From positions 220,777 through 284,776 of IMG/VR virus record IMGVR_UViG_3300020084_000003: a stretch of 64,000 bases of DNA; one strand, 5' to 3'. Each line of letters begins with the position of its first letter. Position 1 is the stretch's first letter. Shown here in pieces: positions 24,489 to 61,205 of this stretch. Made by a program: the position numbers and the translations under genes. The notes under the pieces were generated by a model. That model was not told where the DNA came from, did no database searches, and saw only the letters and a list, made by a program, of their open reading frames with translations.

Positions 24489-27400
24489 TTAAGCTATTCT
24501 TACTACTAATTCGAATGGACCCGGATTAGAAGCATCAAATGCGGCTTGAGTATTAACTGTGGTTATTATTATAGATTGCCCCGCTGGACCGGTGTTTCCA
24601 ACTGGACCTTGCGGGCCAGTGTTACCTACCGGACCTTGAATACCTTGTGGTCCAGTATTTCCTTGCGGCCCTTGTGGACCTTGGATGCCCTGTGGGCCGG
24701 TGTTGCCAACTCGACCTTGAGGGCCTATCGGACCACGTTCGCCTACTGGTGAAAACGCAAGAATATCCCAATTAGTTGAAATATTTTCAAATGGTGAAGA
24801 ATTTCCATCTGTTTGTGAAATCCAAACAAAAGATGCAACTGATCCGTTAAGAGGATCGCCATCACCATCTAGTATTTGGTAAACACCATCTCCTTCTGTA
24901 TAAACAGAATTTGGATTCCACAATCCTCTCCAATTTAAACCGGTTCCTACATCACCTTTTGGACCAACTGGACCTTGTGAGCCTTGCGGACCTATCGGGC
25001 CTTGTGGACCCTCTGGGCCTGTTGGGCCTACTGGACCAATATCACCTTGTGGACCTTGTTCGCCCACTGGTGAAAATACAAGAATGTCCCAATCAATACC
25101 CATGTTTTCAAAAGGATTGCTATTGCCGGGTTCTTCTGGTAGCCAGATATAAGATATAACTGAACCATTCAACGGTGAACCAGAACTTATATTTATTGTT
25201 TGATATACAACATCGTTTTTATTATATATCTCACTAGATAGCCATTCACCCTTCCATTCAATTCCAACTTCACCTTGTGGGCCTACTGGACCTTGCGGGC
25301 CAATCGGGCCTTGTGGTCCCGCAACACCTTGCGGTCCAGTATTTCCTTGTGGACCCTGAACACCTTGTGGTCCTGTTGGACCTGTCGGGCCAACATCACC
25401 AACATCACCTTTTTCGCCTCTTTGGCCTTGGACACCTTGGATACCTTGTGGGCCTTGTGGTCCAGCAGGGCCAACCGGACCTGTATCGCCAATGTCACCC
25501 TTTTCGCCTCTTGGGCCTTGTGGTCCAGTTTCTCCAACTAAACCTTGTGGTCCGGTTTCACCTTGTGGTCCAGTAAGTCCAATTGGACCTTGAGGGCCGG
25601 TTTCGCCTTGTGGACCTTGGATACCTTGTGGACCTGTGTTACCGACCGGACCTTGAGGGCCAACCGGACCCTCTGGACCTTGGACGCCTTGTGGACCTGT
25701 GTTACCTGTCGGACCTACTGGACCTTGAATACCTTGTGGTCCAGTATTTCCAGTTAAACCTATTGGACCTTGGATACCTTGTGGACCTGTGTTACCAACT
25801 GGACCTTGAATACCCTGAATACCTTGTGGTCCGGTATTTCCGACCGGGCCTTGTGGACCTTGGATACCTTGTGGACCAGTGTTGCCAACCGGACCTTGCG
25901 GGCCAGCTATACCTTGTGGACCAGTGTTACCGACCGGACCTTGAGGACCAGTTGGGCCTTGTGGCCCCTGTGGACCTTGGATACCTTGGATACCATTTTC
26001 TCCCTGAATACCTTGCGGCCCTTGTGGGCCAACTGGACCTTGCGGACCTACTGGACCCGCTGGACCTTGTTCACCCACTGGTGAAAATACAAGAATATCC
26101 CAATTTACGGAAATATTTTCAGATGGTATGGAGTTTCCAGATGTATTTGCAGTCCAAACAAAAGATGCAACAGAACCATTTAGAGCATTATTGCTTGAGC
26201 TTAATATTTGATAAACAGCGTCATCTTTTTCATATACAGAATTAGAACTCCACAATCCTCTCCAATTTATACCTTTAGGACCAACTGGACCAATAGGGCC
26301 AACTAAACCACGCGGGCCAACTGGACCTTGCGGACCTTGAATGTTTCCAACGTTATTCCATGAATCATCATTAATTGAGTAAACCCACAAGTTTCCGTCA
26401 ATTATGTATGAATCTCCATTTTCAGATGTTAATGGCAGATCATCTTCTGATTCGAGCGCACCAATAATATTTACGCCGGTTCCATCGTCACCTTTTTCGC
26501 CAATATCACCTTTTGGACCAACCGGACCTTGCGGACCTACTGGACCTTGAATACCTTGTGGACCTGTGTTACCTGTCGGGCCAACTGGACCTTGAATGCC
26601 TTGTGGTCCGGTGTTGCCTTGTGGCCCTTGTGGTCCTATCGGGCCACGCTCACCTGTTGGACCTTGCGGCCCTTCCGGTCCCTGAATACCTTGTGGGCCA
26701 GTATTTCCAACCGGTCCTTGAGGGCCAGTTTCACCTTGTGGTCCGGTGTTGCCTTGTGGCCCTTGTGGACCGGTATTACCAACTGGACCTTGCGGACCTT
26801 GAATACCCTGAATACCTTGTGGACCGGTGTTACCGGTTGGACCTGTAGCGCCTCTATTTGCCAAAATAGACCATGTAGAGGTAGTAGTTGGAACAACGTT
26901 AATTGCAGTATTTACTATTAAGATATAAGAAGTATTTGAAGAGTAAACAACATCATTTCTTGAATATGTTGCAGCAGCGTTATAGTTTCCTCTCCAAGTT
27001 ATACCAACTGGACCGGTATTACCAACTGGACCTTGCGGACCTGTGTCACCGACCGGGCCTTGTGGTCCGGTTTCACCCTGAATACCTTGCGGTCCAGTAT
27101 TTCCAGTTAAACCTTGAATACCCTGCGGGCCTTGAATACCTTGTGGGCCTGTGTTACCAATATCGCCTTTTGGACCAACCGGACCTTGCGGACCTACTGG
27201 ACCTTGAATACCTTGCGGTCCAGTATTTCCAGTTAAACCTTGTGGGCCTTGTGGTCCGGTTTCGCCTCTCTCGCCTCTTTGACCTTGCGGACCTGTTGGA
27301 CCTACCGGGCCTTGTGGACCTTGGATACCTTGTGGACCTTCATCACCCACATCACCTTTTGGTCCAACTGGACCAATTGGACCTTGAATACCTTGTGGGC

Positions 27401-28520
27401 CAGTATTTCCAGTTAAACCTTGGATACCTTGTGGGCCTTGTGGACCGGTATTGCCAACTGGACCCTGCGGACCAACTGGACCTTGTTCGCCTTGCGAACC
27501 TCTGTTTGCAAGAATTGACCATGTAGATGTAGTTGTTGGATTTATATTGACAGCATTGTTTGATATTAAAATATATGATGTATTTGAATAATAAACAACA
27601 TCATTTCTAACATATGTAGCTGACGTGTTATAGCTTCCCCTCCAAGTTATACCTTGTGGGCCTACTATACCTTGAATACCTTGTGGCCCTTGTGGACCGG
27701 TATTACCAACTGGACCTTGCGGACCTGTGGCACCCTGCGGTCCAACTGGACCTTGCGGACCTATTGGACCAACTGGACCTTGAATGCCTTGTGGACCGGT
27801 GTTTCCAGTTAAACCTATTGGGCCTTGTGGTCCTATTGGACCTACCGGGCCACGCTCACCTGTTGGTCCTAATGGGCCTTGTGGTCCTATTGGACCCTCT
27901 GGGCCTATTGGACCTTGCGGACCAACATCACCAGTATCACCTTTAATTTTACCAATATTTTCCCAATTGCCTGAACCTTGGCTAAACCACAAATCTCCAT
28001 TAATAATATAACAGTCGCCTCTAGGAGCGTTTACTGGCAATAATGTTGGATTGTCTACAGTTCCTCTAATGTTAACACCGGTTCCTCTTGGACCTTGCGG
28101 ACCTGCTGGACCACGATCACCTTTCAGAGAACCACCATCAACAAATTCCAAACCATTATAATACCATAGATGCTCATCTATGATATACGCATCGCCTATC
28201 TCGGCAACTTCTGGCAAATTTATTACGCTTCCAAGATTACCTTTTATTAAGGTTCCTCTTGAAGTAATGTCGTTATTAAATTCTTTTATGAATATACGTG
28301 CGGTTTTATTTGCTGTTGCTACGGCTCTAAAGCGGACTGTAGTATTAGCTGGTATTGTTCCAATAAAACCCGGTCTAAGCAAAGCACCATTATTGTATGT
28401 TTCTGGTGCTTCAACCCCAAAACTCATTAAAACCGGTGCGCCTGTCTTTATGCTGACAAGCGACAAACCGGTTGTTACTATTGGTTCTGACCATGTGTTT
28501 CTAACTACCAAATCTGTCAT
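24489..28520 (-). CDS. collagen-like fibre protein
   Basis: Hundreds of G-P-Q/G-N-T/G-I-Q triplets interrupted by five W(R/K)G..Y...D.V.Y domains; late promoter at 28551-28558. Confidence 0.85.
24580..27940. repeat. collagen-coding tandem repeats
   Basis: Recurrent ggaccttg/tggtcc/gggcc units. Confidence 0.9.
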
Positions 28521-38353: not shown

Positions 38354-38440
38354 ATTATACCTTGGCAGGATTCGAACCTGCGCTAGACCCACCCTTTCGG
38401 GACTCGATACCAACTTCTCATTACGGCAACAAGGTATAAT
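38354..38440 (-). ncRNA. anticodon-less tRNA-like RNA
   Basis: 11-bp terminal stem, GCAGG-TTCGAAT-CCTGC T arm, CCC-GAAA-GGG instead of an anticodon arm, no CCA; own promoter at 38444-38472. Confidence 0.6.
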
Positions 38441-38482
38441 GCCTTATAACACTCGAATCTATGTGTGTCAAGTGTAAAATAA

Positions 38483-44726: not shown

Positions 44727-44732
44727 AATTAG

Positions 44733-44828
44733 TTCAGGAATATATTTGTGCCCACCATCGGGCGATTCGCAAAATGCTGCAAATATAGGAGTCGAACCTA
44801 TAAGTTTTGTTTGCTGTAATATTCCTTT
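44733..44828 (-). ncRNA. CAGCAA-handle RNA copy B (T-arm cargo)
   Basis: GGAATAT-TACAGCAA..ATAGG-TTCGACT-CCTAT..ATATTCC-TGAA. Confidence 0.7.
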
Positions 44829-44888
44829 ATAACAACACATCAGCGCGAACGAGGTTTGTGCTTGGCCGAAAGGAAGCCGATGTGTTGA

Positions 44889-45138
44889 TATAAAGAAACA
44901 AGTTCTTTAATTTATTCAGTAATACGCGCTTTAGACATTTGCGTTTACCATTCCGCCATTTCAGGATTTCTCCTAAAAGTGGGATTCGAACCCACAATCC
45001 GATGTTTTTGCTGTATATTGCTGTAGTATTCCTTTATAATAACATACCAGTTCTTATGTATAATGGGATTTCTCCCTTGATCTAATATATTTTTTCAGGT
45101 ATGTTATTATAAAGAAACAAGTTCTTTAATTTATTCAG
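44889..45138. repeat. 31-bp perfect direct repeat (44889-44919 and 45108-45138)
   Basis: tataaagaaacaagttctttaatttattcag occurs twice, 219 bp apart. Confidence 0.9.
44915..45035 (-). ncRNA. CAGCAA-handle RNA copy C (permuted T-acceptor-D cargo)
   Basis: T arm GTGGG-TTCGAAT-CCCAC, acceptor TTTTAGGA-GAAA-TCCTGAAA, D arm GCG-GAATGGTAAA-CGC. Confidence 0.75.
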
Positions 45139-45255
45139 GATTGATTTGCATACATGTTACCATTACACCACAAGTAGTTTTACCTACCAGCAGGGATTCG
45201 AACCCTGATCTTCCTTGTCGAAAAAGATTTGCTAAAAATTGCTGAAACAATCCTT
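45134..45255 (-). ncRNA. CAGCAA-handle RNA copy D (permuted T-acceptor-D cargo)
   Basis: CAGGG-TTCGAAT-CCCTG, CTGGTAG..CTACTTG, GTG-TAATGGTAA-CAT; handle GGATTG/CAATCC. Confidence 0.75.
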
Positions 45256-45313
45256 GTAAGATAACCATGCCACAGAAAGGATAAAAGACTTGGTTATCTC
45301 AGAAAAATTGTTA

Positions 45314-48576: not shown

Positions 48577-49080
48577 TTATTCATTATAGCTAAATTTTCT
48601 AGCTGCTTTAGAAATGTTAGTATGATGGACATTGAACATTTCTCCTAATTCTCTTGAAGAATATTTTCCACCATTTTTCTTTGCATTTTTAATTATAAAC
48701 TCAACTTGTTCTTCTGTTAGCTTAGAACCAGAATTTTTTATTCGTTTTTTAGCTTTATTTAACCCCATCTTAAAAGCGTGTTGAACATTTTCTTTCCCTG
48801 TAACCCATTCTAGATTAGAAACAATATTATTATTCTTATTCCCATCTTTATGATTTACCTCTGGTAAGTCATTTAAATTATCAATGAACGCCATTGCAAC
48901 TAAACGATGTATTCTAAAACATTTACATACTCCCTCTACTCTAGTAGATAATACAGAATATCCAGACTTAACCTTACCTTGTTTTAAAATCTTATTCGTT
49001 CTTTTAGAAAATACTCGCCCCATATTGGAAATTATGAATATGGTTTCATAACCAACAACATCTTTCCAAATTTCTTTCAT
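48577..49080 (-). CDS. NUMOD4-HNH homing endonuclease
   Basis: EIWKDVVGYE..ISNMGRV; IHRLVAMAF..EVNHKDGNKNNN..NLEW. Confidence 0.9.
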   Translation of the reverse strand: MKEIWKDVVGYETIFIISNMGRVFSKRTNKILKQGKVKSGYSVLSTRVEGVCKCFRIHRLVAMAFIDNLNDLPEVNHKDGNKNNNIVSNLEWVTGKENVQHAFKMGLNKAKKRIKNSGSKLTEEQVEFIIKNAKKNGGKYSSRELGEMFNVHHTNISKAARKFSYNE

Positions 49081-51044: not shown

Positions 51045-51173
51045 TGGTGTCTAGGGTTGGACTTGAACCAACATCTACTCTAAAAGCCTTGCTGCTTTAT
51101 AATGGAGCGATACAACCATATTGTTTCAATGGTAGGGCTTACCTTTCGCCCAATTTTACGTATACACCCAGAC
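51045..51173 (-). ncRNA. 129-nt tRNA-like RNA with an expanded core
   Basis: Acceptor GTCTGGG/CCTAGAC-A-CCA and T arm GTTGG-TTCAAGT-CCAAC flank an oversized interior. Confidence 0.6.
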
Positions 51174-52029: not shown

Positions 52030-52698
52030 TTAGTTTCTAACTACAGCATTCAACTCTAGTTTTCCACAACTTCCCAAATCAACTGTCACTGGAACATGTT
52101 GACCATTTTCCAATTCACCACTGGCTTCGACTACAAAAATGTCAGTCAAATCAGTATCAATGATATGCTCTTGACCGGCAGCTAGAACATACTCTTGTTC
52201 TACCTCAGTATGGTCATTAACACCATGTGTAGTAGTTACAGTTGTGTCATTTGTAGCAACTTGTGCATTTGTTGCTTCTGTTTCATTATTACCATTTCCA
52301 AATATGTTTGCAAAGAAACCGCCTTCATCATCAGATGATGACTCACTTGAAACCCTTTTTATTCTACATTCTTCGTCACCATTATTTCTGATAATCAAGA
52401 CAGGTTCATTTTCATCCACAGCTTCATCAGTAATAACTGTAGGCTCTGTCACGGCAGTTCCAACTGTTCCTGTTGTATCAACAGGTCCACCACCCAATGT
52501 GGTAGTTGCATTTGCGTCTGCATTAGTATCAGTATTCATATTATCGGCAGAATTTACTTCATTTGTAGTATCAACATCTGTCGTTTCCATTTGTTGTTCT
52601 ACTGTATAATCGGGATTATTTGTAGTTGATGCATCTTGCGCTATAGCACTTGTGGTTAGCAGCAATGATGCTCCCATAGCTATCATAATCTTATTCAT
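52030..52698 (-). CDS. secreted/periplasmic acidic low-complexity protein
   Basis: Signal peptide MNKIMIAMGASLLLTTSAIA-QD; two Cys. Confidence 0.7.
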   Translation of the reverse strand: MNKIMIAMGASLLLTTSAIAQDASTTNNPDYTVEQQMETTDVDTTNEVNSADNMNTDTNADANATTTLGGGPVDTTGTVGTAVTEPTVITDEAVDENEPVLIIRNNGDEECRIKRVSSESSSDDEGGFFANIFGNGNNETEATNAQVATNDTTVTTTHGVNDHTEVEQEYVLAAGQEHIIDTDLTDIFVVEASGELENGQHVPVTVDLGSCGKLELNAVVRN

Positions 52699-52885: not shown

Positions 52886-53488
52886 TTAGAATTTGTAGAT
52901 AGCGCGAACACCAACAGTTTCTACGTCAGCAGTAAAGCCTTCGGCACCTTCAAACACGTTCTGATTAAAACCAGAATTGCCTAGATCGGTGCGGCTGTAT
53001 TTACCACCAACAACTAGATTGTCGGTAACTGCATAGTCAATACCTACGCCATATGTTGAAGAATCTTCTCCGTCAACTTTGGCATATCCTGCGGAAATGT
53101 ATGGCAGGACGCGATTGAATGCGTAACCGGCTTGTGCTTCTGCGGTATAAGTCTCAGCACCACCACTTTCAAATAGGCTTTCAGTTTTTTGATAACCTAG
53201 CTCACCACCCAGAACAAAGTTGTTCTCGAATTGATGACGATAACCAGCTACAACACCATAGGTAGTTGCGGTATCATCGCGGCTCTCAAACTCAAAATCT
53301 TCTGCAAAATCTAGATCAACAGCGGTGCGGGCGACTGTGCCACCAACATATGCACCTGACCATGAAAATTGTGGTGCGGTCACAACGGCAACTGGTTCAA
53401 CTTCAACCACCGAAGAAGTGTATCCACCAGCGACAGCGCCGGTAGCTAGAAAAGCTGAAAGACCAGCAGCAATAACAAATTTGTTCAT
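52886..53488 (-). CDS. outer-membrane beta-barrel protein (Omp25/Omp31/RopB-like)
   Basis: Signal peptide, WSGAYVGG, GYRHQF..FVLGGE, PYISAGYA, C-terminal YKF. Confidence 0.85.
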   Translation of the reverse strand: MNKFVIAAGLSAFLATGAVAGGYTSSVVEVEPVAVVTAPQFSWSGAYVGGTVARTAVDLDFAEDFEFESRDDTATTYGVVAGYRHQFENNFVLGGELGYQKTESLFESGGAETYTAEAQAGYAFNRVLPYISAGYAKVDGEDSSTYGVGIDYAVTDNLVVGGKYSRTDLGNSGFNQNVFEGAEGFTADVETVGVRAIYKF

Positions 53489-53749: not shown

Positions 53750-53824
53750 TGGTAGTGCTAGTAGGATTTGAACCTACGACATATCGGATATGAGCCGATT
53801 TTTCTACCCCTGAAATATAGCACC
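53750..53824 (-). tRNA. tRNA-Met(CAT)
   Basis: ATCGG-CTCATAT-CCGAT, CCA. Confidence 0.85.
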
Positions 53825-54367
53825 CTACTTATTCCTATTTTTATTTTTTAAAGTTTCTGAAATCTTTCTTTTGGTTTCTTCTGAAAGAATTCTTTTTGGT
53901 CTTTTCTTTGCCGAATCAGATAATTTTTGTCTATATTCATCTGATATGATCCCCCTTTTCCCTTTATTCCAAGGTTCAATTTCACCATTAGCAATTCTTC
54001 TTTTTAAGGTCTGATTTCTTCGCATCTTTGCGTTTTCATCATTCCTAATAAGTTCTTTAGTTTTCTCTGAATGTGTTTTACCTTTAAAATGTGGGCCACC
54101 CTCACCACCAACACCCAGATTGTATGTATCTTCTCTCAAACAGAAATCCTCTGTTATGAGTTTTTTCTCCATTAAGTTCATTTCTTCTTCATTATCAAAA
54201 ACAAATAAAACTTCTTTGGTGAAATTATTTTTACCATACTTCTTTATAGCATTAACAATCAATCTGCCTGAACCCATGTAAGAGTCATCGGGCTTCATGG
54301 TTTGATGTTTCCCAATATAAATTTTACCGTTAACATTGTTAGTTATTTTGTATATAGTATAGAACAA
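53825..54367 (-). CDS. GIY-YIG homing endonuclease (SegB-like; TTG/GTG start re-called)
   Basis: YTIYKITN..KIYIGKH..YMGSG; NUMOD3 motifs; the longer track ORF overlaps the upstream gene. Confidence 0.85.
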   Translation of the reverse strand: MFYTIYKITNNVNGKIYIGKHQTMKPDDSYMGSGRLIVNAIKKYGKNNFTKEVLFVFDNEEEMNLMEKKLITEDFCLREDTYNLGVGGEGGPHFKGKTHSEKTKELIRNDENAKMRRNQTLKRRIANGEIEPWNKGKRGIISDEYRQKLSDSAKKRPKRILSEETKRKISETLKNKNRNK

Positions 54368-54434
54368 TTGCACCTTCCTCTTATAGATAATATCTCTATT
54401 ATTTATAATCAGAGGAAGGTGCGTTAGACTACTT

Positions 54435-55025
54435 TCACCAATAGTCCCAGATTCGGGCTTTACCGTTTTTGTTATCTTGCCACACCATATCATCTGCGGC
54501 ATCAATGTCAAGCATGATCTTTTGGATGTTCTTTTTGTCAGAATTTCTACGGTCACGCTTGGCCGCGTTTTTAAAACCAGTGCTGCGACCTGTTTCAGAC
54601 ATTTTACCATCACGGCTCATGCTATCAAAGTAATCAGAATGTTCTTTGTAGTTTTCTTTAAAGAAGCGATCATAATCACCGTGAAATGGGACTTTACGAA
54701 TTTTACCCGGAAAATAACCGTATGGTTTTATTGGGTGGGCATAATAAAAATGAAACAGCCTGTCATTACCGTAGCTTGCCATCCATGTAGCACGATTCAT
54801 TTGATAATCGAAAAGCTGCTTATTATACTCTTTCATTTTAGCATCGTATTCGGCTTTTCTGGCTTTATATATTGCCTCATATTCGGCTTTAGGAATTTTT
54901 TCCCACACAAAACCATATTTTATGGCACGAGTAAAATCTCTATCAATCATTTTCTTGATATATTTTTCTTTGATGCCATTTTCGAACCAGTAAAGGCTCT
55001 TTTTGTTTCTATAGGTTTTACCCAA
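54435..55025 (-). CDS. hypothetical protein
   Basis: RBS AGGAGA. Confidence 0.6.
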   Translation of the reverse strand: MGKTYRNKKSLYWFENGIKEKYIKKMIDRDFTRAIKYGFVWEKIPKAEYEAIYKARKAEYDAKMKEYNKQLFDYQMNRATWMASYGNDRLFHFYYAHPIKPYGYFPGKIRKVPFHGDYDRFFKENYKEHSDYFDSMSRDGKMSETGRSTGFKNAAKRDRRNSDKKNIQKIMLDIDAADDMVWQDNKNGKARIWDYW

Positions 55026-55141
55026 TTTATTTCTCCTTCTAAGTTAATACCTTAGAAGTCGTCGTAAAATTTCCTTGTTCTAGTCAAGTTTAGTCTCCTT
55101 TAATGATGGGAGTGACGAAAAAACTCAATCTGTTGTCTTTC

Positions 55142-55228
55142 TTCTGGGTTACACCACATCATGCGGTTTAACGCCACTTTACCCCATTCCCTGATAATCG
55201 TTATATATTAGTTGCTGAACTAACCCTC
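55142..55228 (-). ncRNA. CAGCAA-handle RNA copy H
   Basis: GGGTTA-GTTCAGCAA..TGTGGTG-TAACCC-AGAA. Confidence 0.65.
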
Positions 55229-55340
55229 AATCCATATTCACAAGGTGTATCGTTATGGATGACGACCAATGATAGGAATTATCATTGTTAAAATTATGGC
55301 GTGAGGCGAAGACATTTGAATGTAAAAACTGCTGTTTTTT

Positions 55341-55432
55341 ATCTGGGTTACACCACAGAATTTACAATTCAAAGCTCCCTCACTATCGCTGGAAGTATCT
55401 TTCGATACGGCTTGGTTGCTGAATTAACCCTA
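55341..55432 (-). ncRNA. CAGCAA-handle RNA copy I
   Basis: GGGTTA-ATTCAGCAA..GTATC-GAAA-GATAC..GAA-TTGTAAA-TTC-TGTGGTG-TAACCC-AG. Confidence 0.65.
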
Positions 55433-55549
55433 ATCTTGTTCACAGAACAAGCACTGTATGACATAAATTATCATAAAAAAGCAACTTAATCCATTTGGCG
55501 ATCAACCCAAACTTCATGTTTCTATTAGGGGATCAATCCTATGAAGAAA

Positions 55550-55617
55550 CTGCCCTTGCGACTTGAACGCTATCTCGGCACGGTAGGCCGCGTCTTATCC
55601 GATTAGACCAGTATGCT
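55550..55617 (-). pseudogene. degenerate tRNA (loop CTACCGT)
   Basis: D arm GTCT..AGAC, CGGC/GCCG stem and TTCAAGT loop, but acceptor unpaired and no CCA. Confidence 0.4.
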
Positions 55618-55645
55618 ATAGTTGCTTGTTTATAACAATTGTTAA

Positions 55646-55721
55646 TGGCGGGAATGACGAGATTCGAACTCGCGTTGCACGGATCGACAATCCGGCGTAA
55701 TCACCACTATACCACATCCCC
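55646..55721 (-). tRNA. tRNA-Asp(GTC)
   Basis: CCGGA-TTGTCGA-TCCGT, G73, CCA. Confidence 0.92.
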
Positions 55722-55724
55722 ACA

Positions 55725-56270
55725 ATGAGTGTCAATACCGCGTCGTATTTATTTCATACGCCCGACTCCAATCGTCACCAAAAGGCTAGGTCGGAAGATA
55801 CACTCATTCAATAAAATGCCCATTACACGGTGATGAACCGTCATATGTCTGGTGATGGATAGTAAGCTTGCGGCGTTACTATTTGTTCCCATCAAGCCTC
55901 CCAGAAAGGTCAAACGTCAAGCATTTTATATTCGAATTTCTACGGTTTGTCGCAGACACCGAAAAACTGCTTCCGAATACCTAGACCCACAGCACAACCT
56001 GTGTAGTGTCATTTCACCGCATCAGCCATCGCGTATTCTTCTAAAAATGCGCCCCGTTCGCGTATCACTACCAACGAGTCTCAAGACTTACGGTCATAGA
56101 GCAACTTCTAGCATCAAGATAATCAATCTAATTATGGACATGCCCTTGCCCAGAGTAGGTTTTTATGGAACTCAACCTTTCACTTAAACCACCCGTATCT
56201 CACAACGGGAGGGCGGACAGTTTTAACTTCACTGACAAGTAAGTGAATAAAAGATTGATTAATTCCTCTA
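55725..56270 (-). ncRNA. candidate large structured ncRNA (about 540 nt)
   Basis: No credible ORF, many hairpins, lies between a promoter and tRNA-Asp. Confidence 0.5.
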
Positions 56271-56277
56271 TTCAAAT

Positions 56278-56335
56278 TGGTCGCATGGAATTGTCGGTAA
56301 TGAGCCGACACCTATAGGTTTTCTGCGCTCCATGC
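56278..56335 (-). ncRNA. T-armless tRNA-like RNA with CAU loop and CCA end
   Basis: GCATGGA/TCCATGC stem, GTCGG-CTCATTA-CCGAC, ends GACCA; promoter at 56344-56372. Confidence 0.6.
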
Positions 56336-56426
56336 TAAGGCCACTTATACACTTCCTAATATGACATGTCAAGTTAAAAGTTGTCTAGGAATTAAATTGT
56401 GTAAAAGCTTTGCCTATTCTTAAAAT

Positions 56427-56531
56427 TGGTATTTGGGGTAGGACTTGAACCTACTTCGCCGCAATGCGGTTTACCGAGTATGTTGCAACTCTGCATTTCC
56501 TGATACTAGCCTGAATAGCATCAGCCCAAAT
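56427..56531 (-). ncRNA. 105-nt atypical class-II tRNA-like RNA
   Basis: ATTTGGG/CCCAAAT-A-CCA, 7-bp D stem, GAGT-TGCAACAT-ACTC, variable arm, T arm. Confidence 0.6.
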
Positions 56532-56533
56532 TC

Positions 56534-56610
56534 TGGTTGCGGTGGGTTGGATTTGCACCAACGACCTCTGGCATATGAAACCAGCAAGCTAACTACTGCT
56601 CTACCCCGCA
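56534..56610 (-). tRNA. tRNA-fMet-like (CAT)
   Basis: TGCGGGG-TAGAGCAG 5' end, CTGGT-TTCATAT-GCCAG, T loop TGCAAAT, bulged acceptor; lacks the three G-C initiator pairs. Confidence 0.75.
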
Positions 56611-56616
56611 AAATCT

Positions 56617-56829
56617 TTATTGATAAAAATTTGAAGATTGCATAATGAATATGATATCTTTGTTCTTGAAGGCACTACCTGTCATTAACAATTCTATCGC
56701 ATTTTCATCTGTCAACCCAAACAATGTCTTCAATTTTTCTTTGTTTGGAAGTTCTTCAAACACGCCCCTAATGGCAAAGTATTCTCTGTTGTTAACGGCA
56801 GTTTCGTATAAAACCCAAACAAATCTCAT
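56617..56829 (-). CDS. hypothetical protein
   Basis: RBS AGGAG. Confidence 0.55.
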   Translation of the reverse strand: MRFVWVLYETAVNNREYFAIRGVFEELPNKEKLKTLFGLTDENAIELLMTGSAFKNKDIIFIMQSSNFYQ

Positions 56830-56849
56830 GATATGCTCCTTTAAAATTA

Positions 56850-57079
56850 ATATGATGGTGTGCTGCTACGCCAAAGATTCTAAGGGTCTATTATGACATT
56901 GCTACCTATCATGTCCAAACTTTCGGTAGGTTAAATCTGAGGCTTCGCCCTCAAATCGTATCATAATAACTGCACTTATCCTTCCCCTACACGCCTAATG
57001 TGAAAATAGGACTTTTCACACGTATCATGTTCATCACTCATTATAAGATGGCTGCTCTTAGGCCGACTTCCCAACATAT
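56850..57079 (-). ncRNA. 23S rRNA L11-binding/GTPase-centre mimic with a 175-nt insertion
   Basis: GGAAGTCGGCCTAAGAGCAGCCATC ... GCGTAGCAGCACAC, closed by ATATGTTGG/CCATCATAT. Confidence 0.75.
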
Positions 57080-57083
57080 ATTC

Positions 57084-57239
57084 TTACTTTGATATAAAAC
57101 GATAAGGTGGAATTAAACCAAAGAGTTTCCACGTTCAGATTACCGCATCAGTCGGGTCCGAACCTCTTCTTTACCCATTCACAACGCTGGAAATTCTGTG
57201 TGAGTTGCATACAATCAGCATCGTTTTATATCAAAGTAA
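57084..57239. repeat. 156-bp element with perfect 20-bp terminal inverted repeats
   Basis: TTACTTTGATATAAAACGAT (57084-57103) / ATCGTTTTATATCAAAGTAA (57220-57239). Confidence 0.8.
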
Positions 57240-57380
57240 ATTACCTTTTAACAATCTTCTCGATTGAAGTGGTTAACTGCACCGCAATCTATGATTCGCT
57301 TATACCATTTATATAATAATATTGATCCGTCGAACAATATTGACACAAACCGTCGAATGTGCTAGGTATTGATAATCATA

Positions 57381-57451
57381 TGCTCAATTGGATTCGAACC
57401 AATGTCTCCTACTTCTCACGTAGGCGCATTCTTCCAGTATGCGATCTTGCA
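57381..57451 (-). pseudogene. degenerate class I tRNA with GAG anticodon
   Basis: CCTAC-GTGAGAA-GTAGG, D and T arms present, acceptor mismatched, no CCA. Confidence 0.5.
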
Positions 57452-57471
57452 GAAGATTGATAAAAAGTAAT

Positions 57472-57557
57472 TGGAAGTCCCGGTCGGACTTGAACCGACA
57501 AACCGTTAGGCGCTGTCTTATGAGGACAGAGTGTTTAACCAATTCCACCACGGGACC
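57472..57557 (-). tRNA. class II (Leu-like body) tRNA with CAT anticodon, U73
   Basis: GTG-GAATTGGTTAAA-CAC, CTGTC-CTCATAA-GACAG, variable arm GCC-TAAC-GGT, CCA. Confidence 0.8.
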
Positions 57558-57771: not shown

Positions 57772-58194
57772 ATGAAATACACTAGATGGACCAAAGAAAT
57801 GTTAGAACCAATTGTTGCATCTTCAATGTCTTATGCAGAATGTTTGCGTAAGATGGATAGAAAACCCGTAGGATCAAACTACAAAAACTTACAAAAGAAC
57901 ATCAAAAAGTTTGGACTAGATACATCACACATGCTTCACCAAGCTTGGAACTCTGGGAGAGAATTTAAAGCACTAGATGAATTGATAGGAACCACACAAA
58001 TAAAGAAAAGAATTGTTAAAGAGATGGGACATAAATGCTCTAGTTGTAATCTAACAGAATGGAAGGGAAAGCCCATACCTTTAGAATTAGAACACATAGA
58101 TGGCGATAACCAAAATAACTCTAGAGAAAATCTAACCTTATTATGTTGTAACTGTCATGCATTAACTCCAACTTGGCGCAGAAGGAATAAGTAA
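57772..58194 (+). CDS. HNH endonuclease
   Basis: CSSC..LELEHIDGDNQNNSRENLTLLCCNCH. Confidence 0.85.
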   Translation: MKYTRWTKEMLEPIVASSMSYAECLRKMDRKPVGSNYKNLQKNIKKFGLDTSHMLHQAWNSGREFKALDELIGTTQIKKRIVKEMGHKCSSCNLTEWKGKPIPLELEHIDGDNQNNSRENLTLLCCNCHALTPTWRRRNK

Positions 58195-58602: not shown

Positions 58603-58673
58603 TGGCTGCTGTGGTAGGAATTAAACCTACATTAAACAATATTACCGACAACGTTGACTCGGCAAACACAGCA
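58603..58673 (-). ncRNA. anticodon-less tRNA-like RNA with CCA
   Basis: TGCTGTG/CACAGCA-G-CCA, long D-like arm TGCCGA/TCGGTA, T arm GTAGG-TTTAATT-CCTAC. Confidence 0.65.
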
Positions 58674-59379: not shown

Positions 59380-59395
59380 AATATGTTCCTTATAT

Positions 59396-59577
59396 CGGTA
59401 TCGCGGCAGGATTCGAACCTGCATCTAAAGGCATAAGACGCCAATTGCGTTTGAATTATCATCTACTCCACTATAATGACGTTTCGAACCATCACACAAT
59501 CTTCAATGAAATTAAGTTATAACACAAAATGTTCTCAACACACCTGTTTATAACAGCCAAATTTACACCACGCGAAT
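59396..59577 (-). ncRNA. 182-nt RNA with tRNA-like ends
   Basis: TTCGCG-TGGTGTAAATTTGG 5' end; GCAGG-TTCGAAT-CCTGC-CGCGATACCG 3' end. Confidence 0.5.
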
Positions 59578-61087: not shown

Positions 61088-61205
61088 CTCGGGCGGCAGG
61101 GTTCGAACCTGCGACCACCTGATTACTTTTGAAGCTTCCCGAATCGAACGGGTATTTACCTTTAGCTTCCACAGTCAGGCGCTCTACCAACTGAGCTACA
61201 CCCGA
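61088..61205 (-). tRNA. tRNA-Asn(GTT) interrupted by a 45-nt insert in the anticodon
   Basis: CCTGA-CTGT|45 nt|TAA-TCAGG; 118 nt = 73 + 45; G73; CCA not encoded. Confidence 0.8.

What the first reader, a model, noticed from the sequence alone, without database searches (positions are those of the whole stretch)
55725..56270. Candidate giant ornate ncRNA in the tRNA cluster
About 540 nt without a credible ORF, relatively GC-rich, with many hairpins (e.g. ATAGTAA-CGCCGCAAGC-TTACTAT; AATGAGTGT/ACACTCATT), flanked by tRNA genes. Known: the GOLLD and ROOL large RNAs occur in phage tRNA regions. Family assignment is not established by eye.
Basis: inference. Interest (0 to 1): 0.6.

Follow-up and report, generated by a model that had tools for sequence, protein, structure and literature searches.

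The report
Modular non-coding stretch in phage tRNA cluster
The ORF-free stretch is real and non-coding, but it is not a GOLLD or ROOL giant RNA: it looks like part of a tRNA-operon transcript in a lake T4-like jumbo phage, with two small conserved folded RNA modules either side of a non-conserved spacer.

Summary
The window is the last 64 kb of a 284,776-bp T4-like (gp23 capsid) lake-water phage. It carries about 31 tRNA genes, all on the minus strand.

The flagged stretch lies in an 812-nt gap with no credible ORF (55722-56533), between tRNA-Asp and tRNA-Met. GC is 43-44% against 38% for the genome.

**Family tests.** Rfam finds no GOLLD, ROOL or other large RNA, even at E<=10. The predicted folding energy of the whole stretch is no better than shuffled sequence (z -0.35 on the tRNA strand).

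**The one relative.** A single related phage (locus L093) holds the syntenic region. Only parts are conserved:
- a sigma70-like promoter (56372-56344);
- a 62-nt element starting at the predicted transcription start (56336-56275, 90% identical), with an acceptor-like stem and a look-alike of a tRNA(CAU) anticodon arm;
- a roughly 205-nt two-domain element (55929-55724, about 85% identical) that ends 2 nt before tRNA-Asp.

The 345 nt between these elements has an unrelated 100-nt counterpart in L093.

**Best reading.** This is a promoter-driven tRNA-operon segment carrying small structured RNAs, comparable to T4 rnaC/rnaD, rather than one giant ornate RNA. Transcription was not tested, and covariation rests on two sequences.

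The parts
56534..56610 (-). tRNA-Met (CAU), the upstream flank
   Evidence: ARAGORN; Rfam tRNA 48.5 bits
56428..56531 (-). Uncalled tRNA-like element (TLE). It has a 7-bp acceptor stem, a 9-bp hairpin, a hairpin with an 8-nt loop, a variable hairpin, a canonical T-arm and an ACCA tail.
   Evidence: MFE z -3.1. Against L093, 27 of 27 pairs are kept and 6 have changes on both sides. ARAGORN and Rfam do not call it.
56344..56372 (-). Sigma70-like promoter P1: TTGACA, 17 nt, TATAAG. The predicted start is about 56336.
   Evidence: Regex scan. Both hexamers are conserved in L093 (TTGACA-17-TATAAA). The same promoter type sits just upstream of tRNAs or tRNA-like RNAs at 38471, 45740, 48484 and 61353.
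56275..56336 (-). C element, 62 nt. An 8-bp stem begins 1 nt after the predicted start. It encloses a hairpin GUCGG-CUCAUUA-CCGAC and is followed by a tail ending in CCA.
   Evidence: 56 of 62 columns are identical to L093. MFE z -2.6. The hairpin nearly matches the anticodon arm AUCGG-CUCAUAU-CCGAU of the phage tRNA(CAU) at 53750-53824.
55930..56274 (-). Non-conserved middle (345 nt), read here as a spacer. It includes a domain closed by a 10-bp inverted repeat (56262-56252 with 56129-56120).
   Evidence: L093 has an unrelated 100 nt here. There is no paralogue in the genome. Tile z-scores are -2.4, 0.06 and -0.5.
55811..55929 (-). E1 domain.
Evidence: RNAalifold and pair counts.
55724..55808 (-). 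E2 domain. Its 3' end is 2 nt from the 5' end of tRNA-Asp.
   Evidence: About 85% identical to L093. The closing helix has 3 compensatory pairs, and every one-sided change keeps pairing. MFE z -2.3.
55646..55721 (-). tRNA-Asp (GUC), the downstream flank and probable co-transcript
   Evidence: ARAGORN; Rfam 59.4 bits. A homologous tRNA sits at L093 9386-9456.

Best explanation
The flagged stretch is a segment of a polycistronic tRNA-cluster transcript of a freshwater T4-like jumbo phage, not a single giant RNA.

**Proposed course of events**
1. Host sigma70 RNA polymerase starts at promoter P1 (56372-56344).
2. The transcript begins directly with a 62-nt stem-plus-hairpin element (C), which copies the acceptor stem and anticodon arm layout of a tRNA(CAU).
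3. It then runs through a 345-nt lineage-specific spacer.
4. Next comes a conserved two-domain RNA of about 205 nt (E1 and E2).
5. Two nucleotides later it reaches tRNA-Asp.
6. RNase P cleavage at the tRNA-Asp 5' end would set the 3' end of E. C and E would then persist as small structured by-product RNAs, in the way T4 makes the stable RNAs rnaC and rnaD from its tRNA cluster.

**Shown.** The stretch is non-coding. The promoter, C and E are conserved in the one relative. E2 and the neighbouring tRNA-like element keep pairing through compensatory changes. The middle is not conserved.

**Inferred.** Transcription, the start site, processing, stability and any function. Given the anticodon-arm mimicry, a tRNA-related role is the likeliest function, for example binding a tRNA-handling enzyme or acting as a decoy.
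For: - **Genome context.** The phage is T4-like: a Gp23 capsid hit at E = 6.7e-148 and a Terminase_6N hit. All tRNAs are on the minus strand.
- **Promoter.** P1 matches TTGACA-17-TATAAG. The same type precedes other tRNAs and tRNA-like RNAs in the cluster. It is conserved in L093.
- **Conservation against neighbours.** C is 90% identical and E about 85%. The flanking genes are 69-73% identical at nucleotide level (58-65% at protein level) and the tRNAs 78-98%.
- **Pairing in E.** All 96 cells form standard pairs. Four pairs change on both sides and four change on one side while keeping the pair. Sliding the partners by 1-3 columns drops pairing to 32-47%.
- **Strand.** Eight of the 48 pairs use G-U in at least one sequence. 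These would be A-C mismatches on the plus strand, so the minus strand is the RNA strand.
- **Position.** E2 ends 2 nt before tRNA-Asp.
- **Mimicry.** The C hairpin resembles the anticodon arm of the phage's own tRNA(CAU).
- **Precedent.** T4 annotates rnaC and rnaD as small stable RNAs, plus a GIY-YIG endonuclease, in its tRNA cluster.
- **Middle.** It is unalignable between the two phages, 345 nt against 100 nt.
Against: - No RNA data exist. No listed sequencing run that holds this DNA is an RNA run, and the runs laid on it are DNA contigs of the same strain with no variants.
- Only one homologue was found, so covariation rests on two sequences, and the structure was derived from those same two sequences.
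- The promoter and start site are consensus matches only.
- No terminator or processing site between C and E is shown, so one long functional RNA is not excluded.
- C has almost no informative substitutions: only one G-C to G-U change.
Confidence: 0.55

Rival explanations
1. The whole P1 transcript is one functional large non-coding RNA of a new class, 615 nt here and 350 nt in the relative. It would have a conserved 5' tRNA mimic and a conserved 3' core joined by an expandable variable domain, and would occupy the same niche as GOLLD and ROOL.
For: - The conserved promoter, 5' module and 3' module keep the same order in both phages.
- GOLLD itself is described as having a conserved 3' region, a less conserved 5' region and tRNAs nearby (paper 10.1101/2024.12.08.627333).
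- No terminator-like site lies inside the stretch on the minus strand.
- GC is above the intergenic norm.
Against: - No predicted pairing joins C to E.
- The whole-length MFE equals that of shuffles in both phages.
- The middle shares no sequence or length between the phages.
- C ends in a tRNA-like CCA tail, which suggests a separate 3' end.
Confidence: 0.2
2. The stretch is a non-functional spacer made of decayed tRNA duplicates and insertion scars. The conserved blocks persist only because they carry a promoter and processing signals for tRNA-Asp.
For: - The cluster is full of degenerate or odd tRNA-like pieces.
- The C hairpin looks like a tRNA(CAU) anticodon arm.
- Homing endonucleases sit nearby and lie at different places in the two phages.
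- The middle is not conserved, and there is no thermodynamic signal.
Against: - C and E are more conserved than the neighbouring protein genes, and the conservation reaches well beyond the promoter hexamers.
- The compensatory changes in E2 show selection for pairing, not just for sequence.
Confidence: 0.17
3. It is a divergent member of GOLLD or ROOL.
For: A lake-water phage, a position next to tRNA-Met inside a tRNA island, and an ORF-free stretch of several hundred nt.
Against: - No Rfam match at gathering thresholds or at E<=10 in 54500-57500.
- RF02032 (GOLLD) and RF03087 (ROOL) give no match at E<=10 anywhere in the genome.
- The length is not conserved, 615 nt against 350 nt.
Confidence: 0.03
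4. It holds an unrecognised small protein gene, or is a DNA-level element such as a replication origin.
For: A 111-aa ORF lies on the plus strand. A promoter followed by ORF-free DNA resembles T4 origins (from my own knowledge of T4; not tested here).
Against: - The ORFs have no family hits.
- Frames are not kept between the phages, because non-3n indels interrupt them.
- The 111-aa ORF runs against all neighbouring genes.
- The stretch is GC-rich rather than AT-rich.
- G-U pairs and compensatory changes point to RNA.
Confidence: 0.05

Closest known systems
Bacteriophage T4 small stable RNAs rnaC (species 1) and rnaD (species 2)
   Same: They are non-tRNA RNAs encoded on the tRNA strand inside the tRNA cluster of a T4-type phage, next to a GIY-YIG homing endonuclease, and their function is unknown. 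rnaC folds with an acceptor-like stem and a T-arm, like the neighbouring tRNA-like element here.
   Different: - There is no sequence similarity beyond the T-arm.
- The E model finds nothing in the T4 locus.
- The modules here are 62 and about 205 nt, against 139 and 119 nt in T4.
- The modules here are separated by a long spacer and have their own promoter.
- Stability here is untested.
GOLLD RNA (Rfam RF02032)
   Same: It occurs in phages next to tRNA islands, was first found in lake metagenomes, and has a conserved 3' part and a variable 5' part.
   Different: - There is no match to the covariance model at E<=10.
- The length is 350-615 nt, while many GOLLD members exceed 800 nt.
- There is no thermodynamic sign of extensive structure.
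ROOL RNA (Rfam RF03087)
   Same: It occurs in phages and prophages near tRNA islands. Its model length of 574 is close to the 615 nt seen here.
   Different: There is no match at E<=10. The relative's version is only 350 nt.
Transfer RNA (Rfam RF00005)
   Same: The C element has a 7-8 bp terminal stem, a 5-bp/7-nt hairpin with CAU at the anticodon position, and a CCA-containing tail. The flanking tRNA-like element has an acceptor stem and a T-arm.
   Different: - C has no T-arm or D-arm and carries U where position 37 should be a purine.
- Neither Rfam nor ARAGORN calls it, including ARAGORN's armless-tRNA mode.

Membership tests
GOLLD (RF02032) | Scores against the Rfam covariance model (gathering score 150 bits) | tested here: not met
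   No match at gathering thresholds, at E<=10 in 54500-57500, or at E<=10 in the whole genome.
GOLLD (RF02032) | Large size (many members above 800 nt) with a universally conserved 3' domain | tested here: not met
   The predicted transcript is about 615 nt here and 350 nt in L093. The conserved 3' module is about 205 nt.
GOLLD / ROOL | Encoded in a phage or prophage near a tRNA island | tested here: met
   The host genome is a T4-like phage and the stretch lies between tRNA-Met and tRNA-Asp.
GOLLD / ROOL | Homo-oligomeric RNA nanocage | not testable with these tools
   This needs cryo-EM or sizing of the transcript (the feature is described).
ROOL (RF03087) | Scores against the Rfam covariance model (gathering score 99.1 bits) | tested here: not met
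   No match. The control genomes also gave no hit, so the whole-genome result rests on the cmscan.
T4-type tRNA-cluster stable RNAs (rnaC/rnaD) | Non-tRNA RNA on the tRNA strand inside the tRNA cluster of a T4-like phage | tested here: met
T4-type tRNA-cluster stable RNAs (rnaC/rnaD) | Sequence or structure homology to T4 rnaC or rnaD | tested here: not met
   The alignment shows only T-arm similarity. Model R1 finds nothing in the T4 locus L099.
T4-type tRNA-cluster stable RNAs (rnaC/rnaD) | Accumulates as a stable processed RNA in infection | not testable with these tools
   No listed run that holds this DNA is an RNA run.
tRNA (RF00005) | Cloverleaf recognised by the Rfam model or ARAGORN | tested here: not met
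   C, E and the tRNA-like element are not reported at E<=10, nor by ARAGORN in standard, relaxed or mitochondrial mode.
Protein-coding gene | An open frame with family similarity, or a frame kept in a relative | tested here: not met
   No Pfam or PHROG hit. Non-3n indels fall inside the conserved blocks.

The most novel reading that the evidence does not exclude
The transcript from P1 is a single functional large RNA of a previously undescribed class, confined so far to one lineage of freshwater T4-like jumbo phages. It would be 350-615 nt long and combine a 5' tRNA(CAU) mimic, an expandable middle and a conserved 3' two-domain core abutting tRNA-Asp. It would be one piece of a 1.5-kb array of non-tRNA structured RNAs acting on the host tRNA or translation machinery, or on tRNA-targeting defences.
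Probability: 0.2. Interest if true: 0.65.

Novelty: new variant of a known kind. Interest (0 to 1): 0.4.

Why it matters
Phage tRNA islands are known to hold unexplained RNAs, such as T4 rnaC/rnaD, GOLLD and ROOL. This locus adds a lineage-specific set with no similarity to any of them.

A freshwater T4-like jumbo phage packs its tRNA cluster with conserved non-tRNA structured modules. One of them copies a tRNA(CAU) anticodon arm. If these RNAs are expressed, they give a small and tractable system (62-nt and 205-nt RNAs) for asking what such companions of phage tRNAs do.

For the scan itself, the useful result is negative. GC-rich, ORF-free DNA beside tRNAs is not enough to call a giant ornate RNA.

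Tried and rejected
- **Rfam.** Gathering and E<=10 scans found only tRNAs. My first guess at the GOLLD accession, RF01998, was wrong: it is a group II intron domain. I repeated the search with RF02032.
- **Nucleotide similarity.** blastn against 50,697 phage records found no match. blastn of the stretch against five related IMG/VR records gave only chance matches.
- **Paralogues.** None in the genome.
- **Neighbouring proteins in IMG/VR.** Relatives of ORF196 and of a tail-region protein: none.
- **Capsid-based relatives.** They exist (61-75% identity), but the E covariance model found nothing in 30 of their records.
- **Exact-pattern scans.** Patterns from the C block and from the repeat element were scanned in viral contigs, metagenome contigs (only the source contig) and genome contigs. 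No relatives were found.
- **Reads.** Four runs hold the same strain as DNA contigs with no differences in the region, so they give no microdiversity and no RNA evidence.
- **Third relative.** L097 ends 210 nt upstream of the ORF196 homologue and lacks the region.
- **Y-RNA/Ro idea.** The genome has no TROVE or RtcB gene.
- **Armless tRNA.** ARAGORN's armless-tRNA mode does not call C.
- **Late promoter.** The conserved ATATAAAATG block differs from the phage's TATAAATA late promoter at the last two of its eight bases, and is better explained as one strand of helix H1.
- **Promoter overlapping tRNA-Asp.** The promoter-like site at 55735-55706 has its -10 inside tRNA-Asp, so I treat it as spurious in this phage.
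- **Failed scripts.** Only the results that were printed are used.

Full report
**Setting**

The window is bases 220,777-284,776 of a 284,776-bp IMG/VR virus record. The phage is T4-like: it has a Gp23 major capsid match at E = 6.7e-148 and a Terminase_6N match. It uses the T4 late promoter TATAAATA; 26 of the 51 copies lie within 70 nt upstream of gene starts. Its DNA occurs in lake-water metagenomes.

ARAGORN finds 28 tRNA genes in the window and Rfam adds three. All are on the minus strand, between 33 and 62 kb.

**The observation**

The flagged stretch (55725-56270) lies in an 812-nt gap between tRNA-Asp (55646-55721) and tRNA-Met (56534-56610).

- No credible ORF is present. The longest are 111 aa on the plus strand and 54 aa on the minus strand. 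They have no Pfam or PHROG similarity, and a codon-usage gene caller trained on this genome does not select them.
- GC is 43.6%, against 38.2% for the genome and 36.4% for the median gap. That is the top tenth of gaps.
- Hairpin richness is not above chance. On the tRNA strand the folding energy of 55722-56340 has z = -0.35 against 100 dinucleotide shuffles; on the plus strand z = -1.8.

**Known families**

Rfam reports only tRNAs, at gathering thresholds for the whole window and at E<=10 for 54500-57500. GOLLD (RF02032) and ROOL (RF03087) have no match at E<=10 anywhere in the genome. There is no blastn match in 50,697 phage records and no second copy in the genome.

**A relative**

The 196-aa ORF downstream (54435-55025) has one relative in the large protein collection. 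It is 58% identical and lies on a 286,639-bp scaffold. Its surroundings (L093) are syntenic with the window's minus strand: the same outer-membrane barrel and PCuAC-like genes, and tRNAs in the same order. Comparing the two gives the anatomy below.

**Anatomy on the minus strand**

1. *tRNA-Met, then a tRNA-like element (56531-56428).* The 105-nt element follows tRNA-Met directly. All 27 predicted pairs are kept in L093, and six change on both sides. No tRNA finder calls it.
2. *Promoter.* TTGACA-17-TATAAG (56372-56344) has both hexamers conserved in L093. The same type sits just upstream of tRNAs or tRNA-like RNAs at 38471, 45740, 48484 and 61353.
3. *C element (56336-56275).* It begins at the predicted transcription start, and 56 of 62 columns are identical in L093.
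   - It folds as an 8-bp terminal stem around a 5-bp/7-nt hairpin, z = -2.6.
   - The hairpin GUCGG-CUCAUUA-CCGAC nearly matches the anticodon arm of the phage's own tRNA(CAU) at 53750-53824.
   - The element ends in a CCA-containing tail.
4. *Middle (56274-55930).* These 345 nt correspond to an unrelated 100 nt in L093. One sub-domain is closed by a 10-bp inverted repeat, z -2.4 on both strands. The rest folds no better than shuffles.
5. *E module (55929-55724), about 85% identical to L093.*
- Two invariant blocks form a 10-bp helix (E1) around a variable insert.
It shows three compensatory changes.
   - Across the module, all 96 cells form standard pairs. Four pairs change on both sides and four change on one side while keeping the pair. 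Slid controls pair at only 32-47%.
   - Eight pairs use G-U, which fits the minus strand only.
6. *tRNA-Asp.* E2 ends 2 nt before tRNA-Asp.

**Interpretation**

The neighbouring genes are 69-73% identical at the nucleotide level, while C and E are 85-90% identical. The conservation is therefore selective, and in E it is structural. The middle is not conserved in sequence or length, nothing predicted joins C to E, and the relative's whole 351-nt version has z = 0.07.

The simplest reading is a promoter-driven segment of a polycistronic tRNA transcript that carries two small structured RNAs and a spacer, with RNase P at tRNA-Asp defining the 3' end of E. T4 provides the precedent. Its tRNA cluster is annotated with two small stable RNAs of unknown function, rnaC and rnaD, and a GIY-YIG endonuclease, and rnaC is tRNA-like. 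There is no sequence homology between those RNAs and the modules here.

**Limits**

- No RNA run holds the sequence, and the DNA runs contain the same strain without variants.
- Only one homologue was found despite pattern scans of viral, metagenome and genome collections and a covariance-model search of 30 related phage records.
- Covariation rests on two sequences, and the structure was derived from them.
- Transcription, the start site, processing and function are inferences.

Read laying was given 5,001 letters. No alternative genetic code was used.

**Verdict**

The stretch is a real non-coding region containing conserved RNA structure. It is not GOLLD or ROOL and probably not one giant RNA. 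It is of moderate interest as a lineage-specific set of RNAs that accompany phage tRNAs.

Noticed in passing
window 56428-56531 (-): An uncalled 105-nt tRNA-like RNA lies directly after tRNA-Met. It has a 7-bp acceptor stem, a 9-bp hairpin, a hairpin with an 8-nt loop (UGCAACAU here, UGAAACAU in L093), a variable hairpin that is entirely replaced in L093, a canonical T-arm and an ACCA tail. Six of its 27 pairs are compensatory.
   Followed up: yes
window 55095-55500 (-): Two tandem structured repeats of about 200 nt lie downstream of tRNA-Asp. The region 55026-55645 folds with z -4.3 to -4.8, far stronger than the flagged stretch. Two more copies exist in L093 9556-9935. The long-range helix GGGUUA/UAACCC becomes GGAUUA/UAAUCC in one copy. 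No Rfam match and no hit in IMG/VR pattern scans.
   Followed up: partly
window 38354-38436, 44727-45313, 51045-51173, 58603-58673, 59395-59540 (-): Further elements with T-arms that tRNA finders do not call.
- A 129-nt tRNA-like RNA with an ACCA tail (51173-51045), conserved in L093.
- An 83-nt element starting at a promoter (38436).
- A 71-nt element that is 94% conserved in L093 (58673-58603).
- A tandem array of about 200-nt modules, each with a long near-perfect hairpin and a T-arm (44727-45313).

   Followed up: partly
window 55548-55612 (-): A degenerate tRNA-like piece lies just downstream of tRNA-Asp. ARAGORN calls it only at a relaxed threshold. In L093 this position holds an intact tRNA-Trp.
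   Followed up: no
window 57084-57241 (-): Another ORF-free block, 84% identical to L093 6764-6920. In L093 it begins at the last base of a tRNA-Leu; in the window it lies in the gap downstream of tRNA-Leu(GAG). It may be a further conserved non-coding RNA.
   Followed up: no
outside the window: genome 127,500-145,300 (locus L092 1500-19300): A 17-kb GC-rich island (0.43-0.59) where my gene caller finds almost no genes, with no Rfam hit or phage blastn hit. It carries many copies of a promoter TTGACA-N17-19-TGATATTCT (44 genome-wide, nearly all between 127 and 163 kb), at least 10 copies of the palindrome TGTTTCACGTGAAACA, and repeated terminator hairpins. It looks like many short early transcription units.
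   Followed up: partly
window 53825-54613 (-), 57772-58194 (+), 48577-49080 (-); L093 7748-8389: Homing endonucleases (GIY-YIG, HNH, and NUMOD4+HNH_3) are interspersed among the tRNAs. In L093 a SegE-like GIY-YIG gene sits between tRNA-Met and the tRNA-like element, a site that is empty in the window.
   Followed up: partly
window 52886-53488 (-), 52030-52698 (-): An outer-membrane beta-barrel protein gene and a gene weakly resembling the PCuAC copper chaperone (22.4 bits, below Pfam's cut-off) lie inside the tRNA cluster. The closest cellular relatives of the barrel protein are from Rhodobacterales (Paracoccus, Celeribacter, Jannaschia), a possible hint at the host.
   Followed up: no
window 61088-61205 (-): Rfam calls a 118-nt tRNA here, about 45 nt longer than normal, so it may carry an insertion or intron. 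ARAGORN does not report it.
   Followed up: no
window 24489-28520 (-): A 1,343-aa protein with at least 12 collagen triple-helix repeat matches (E = 2.8e-111) lies among tail-fibre-like genes.
   Followed up: no
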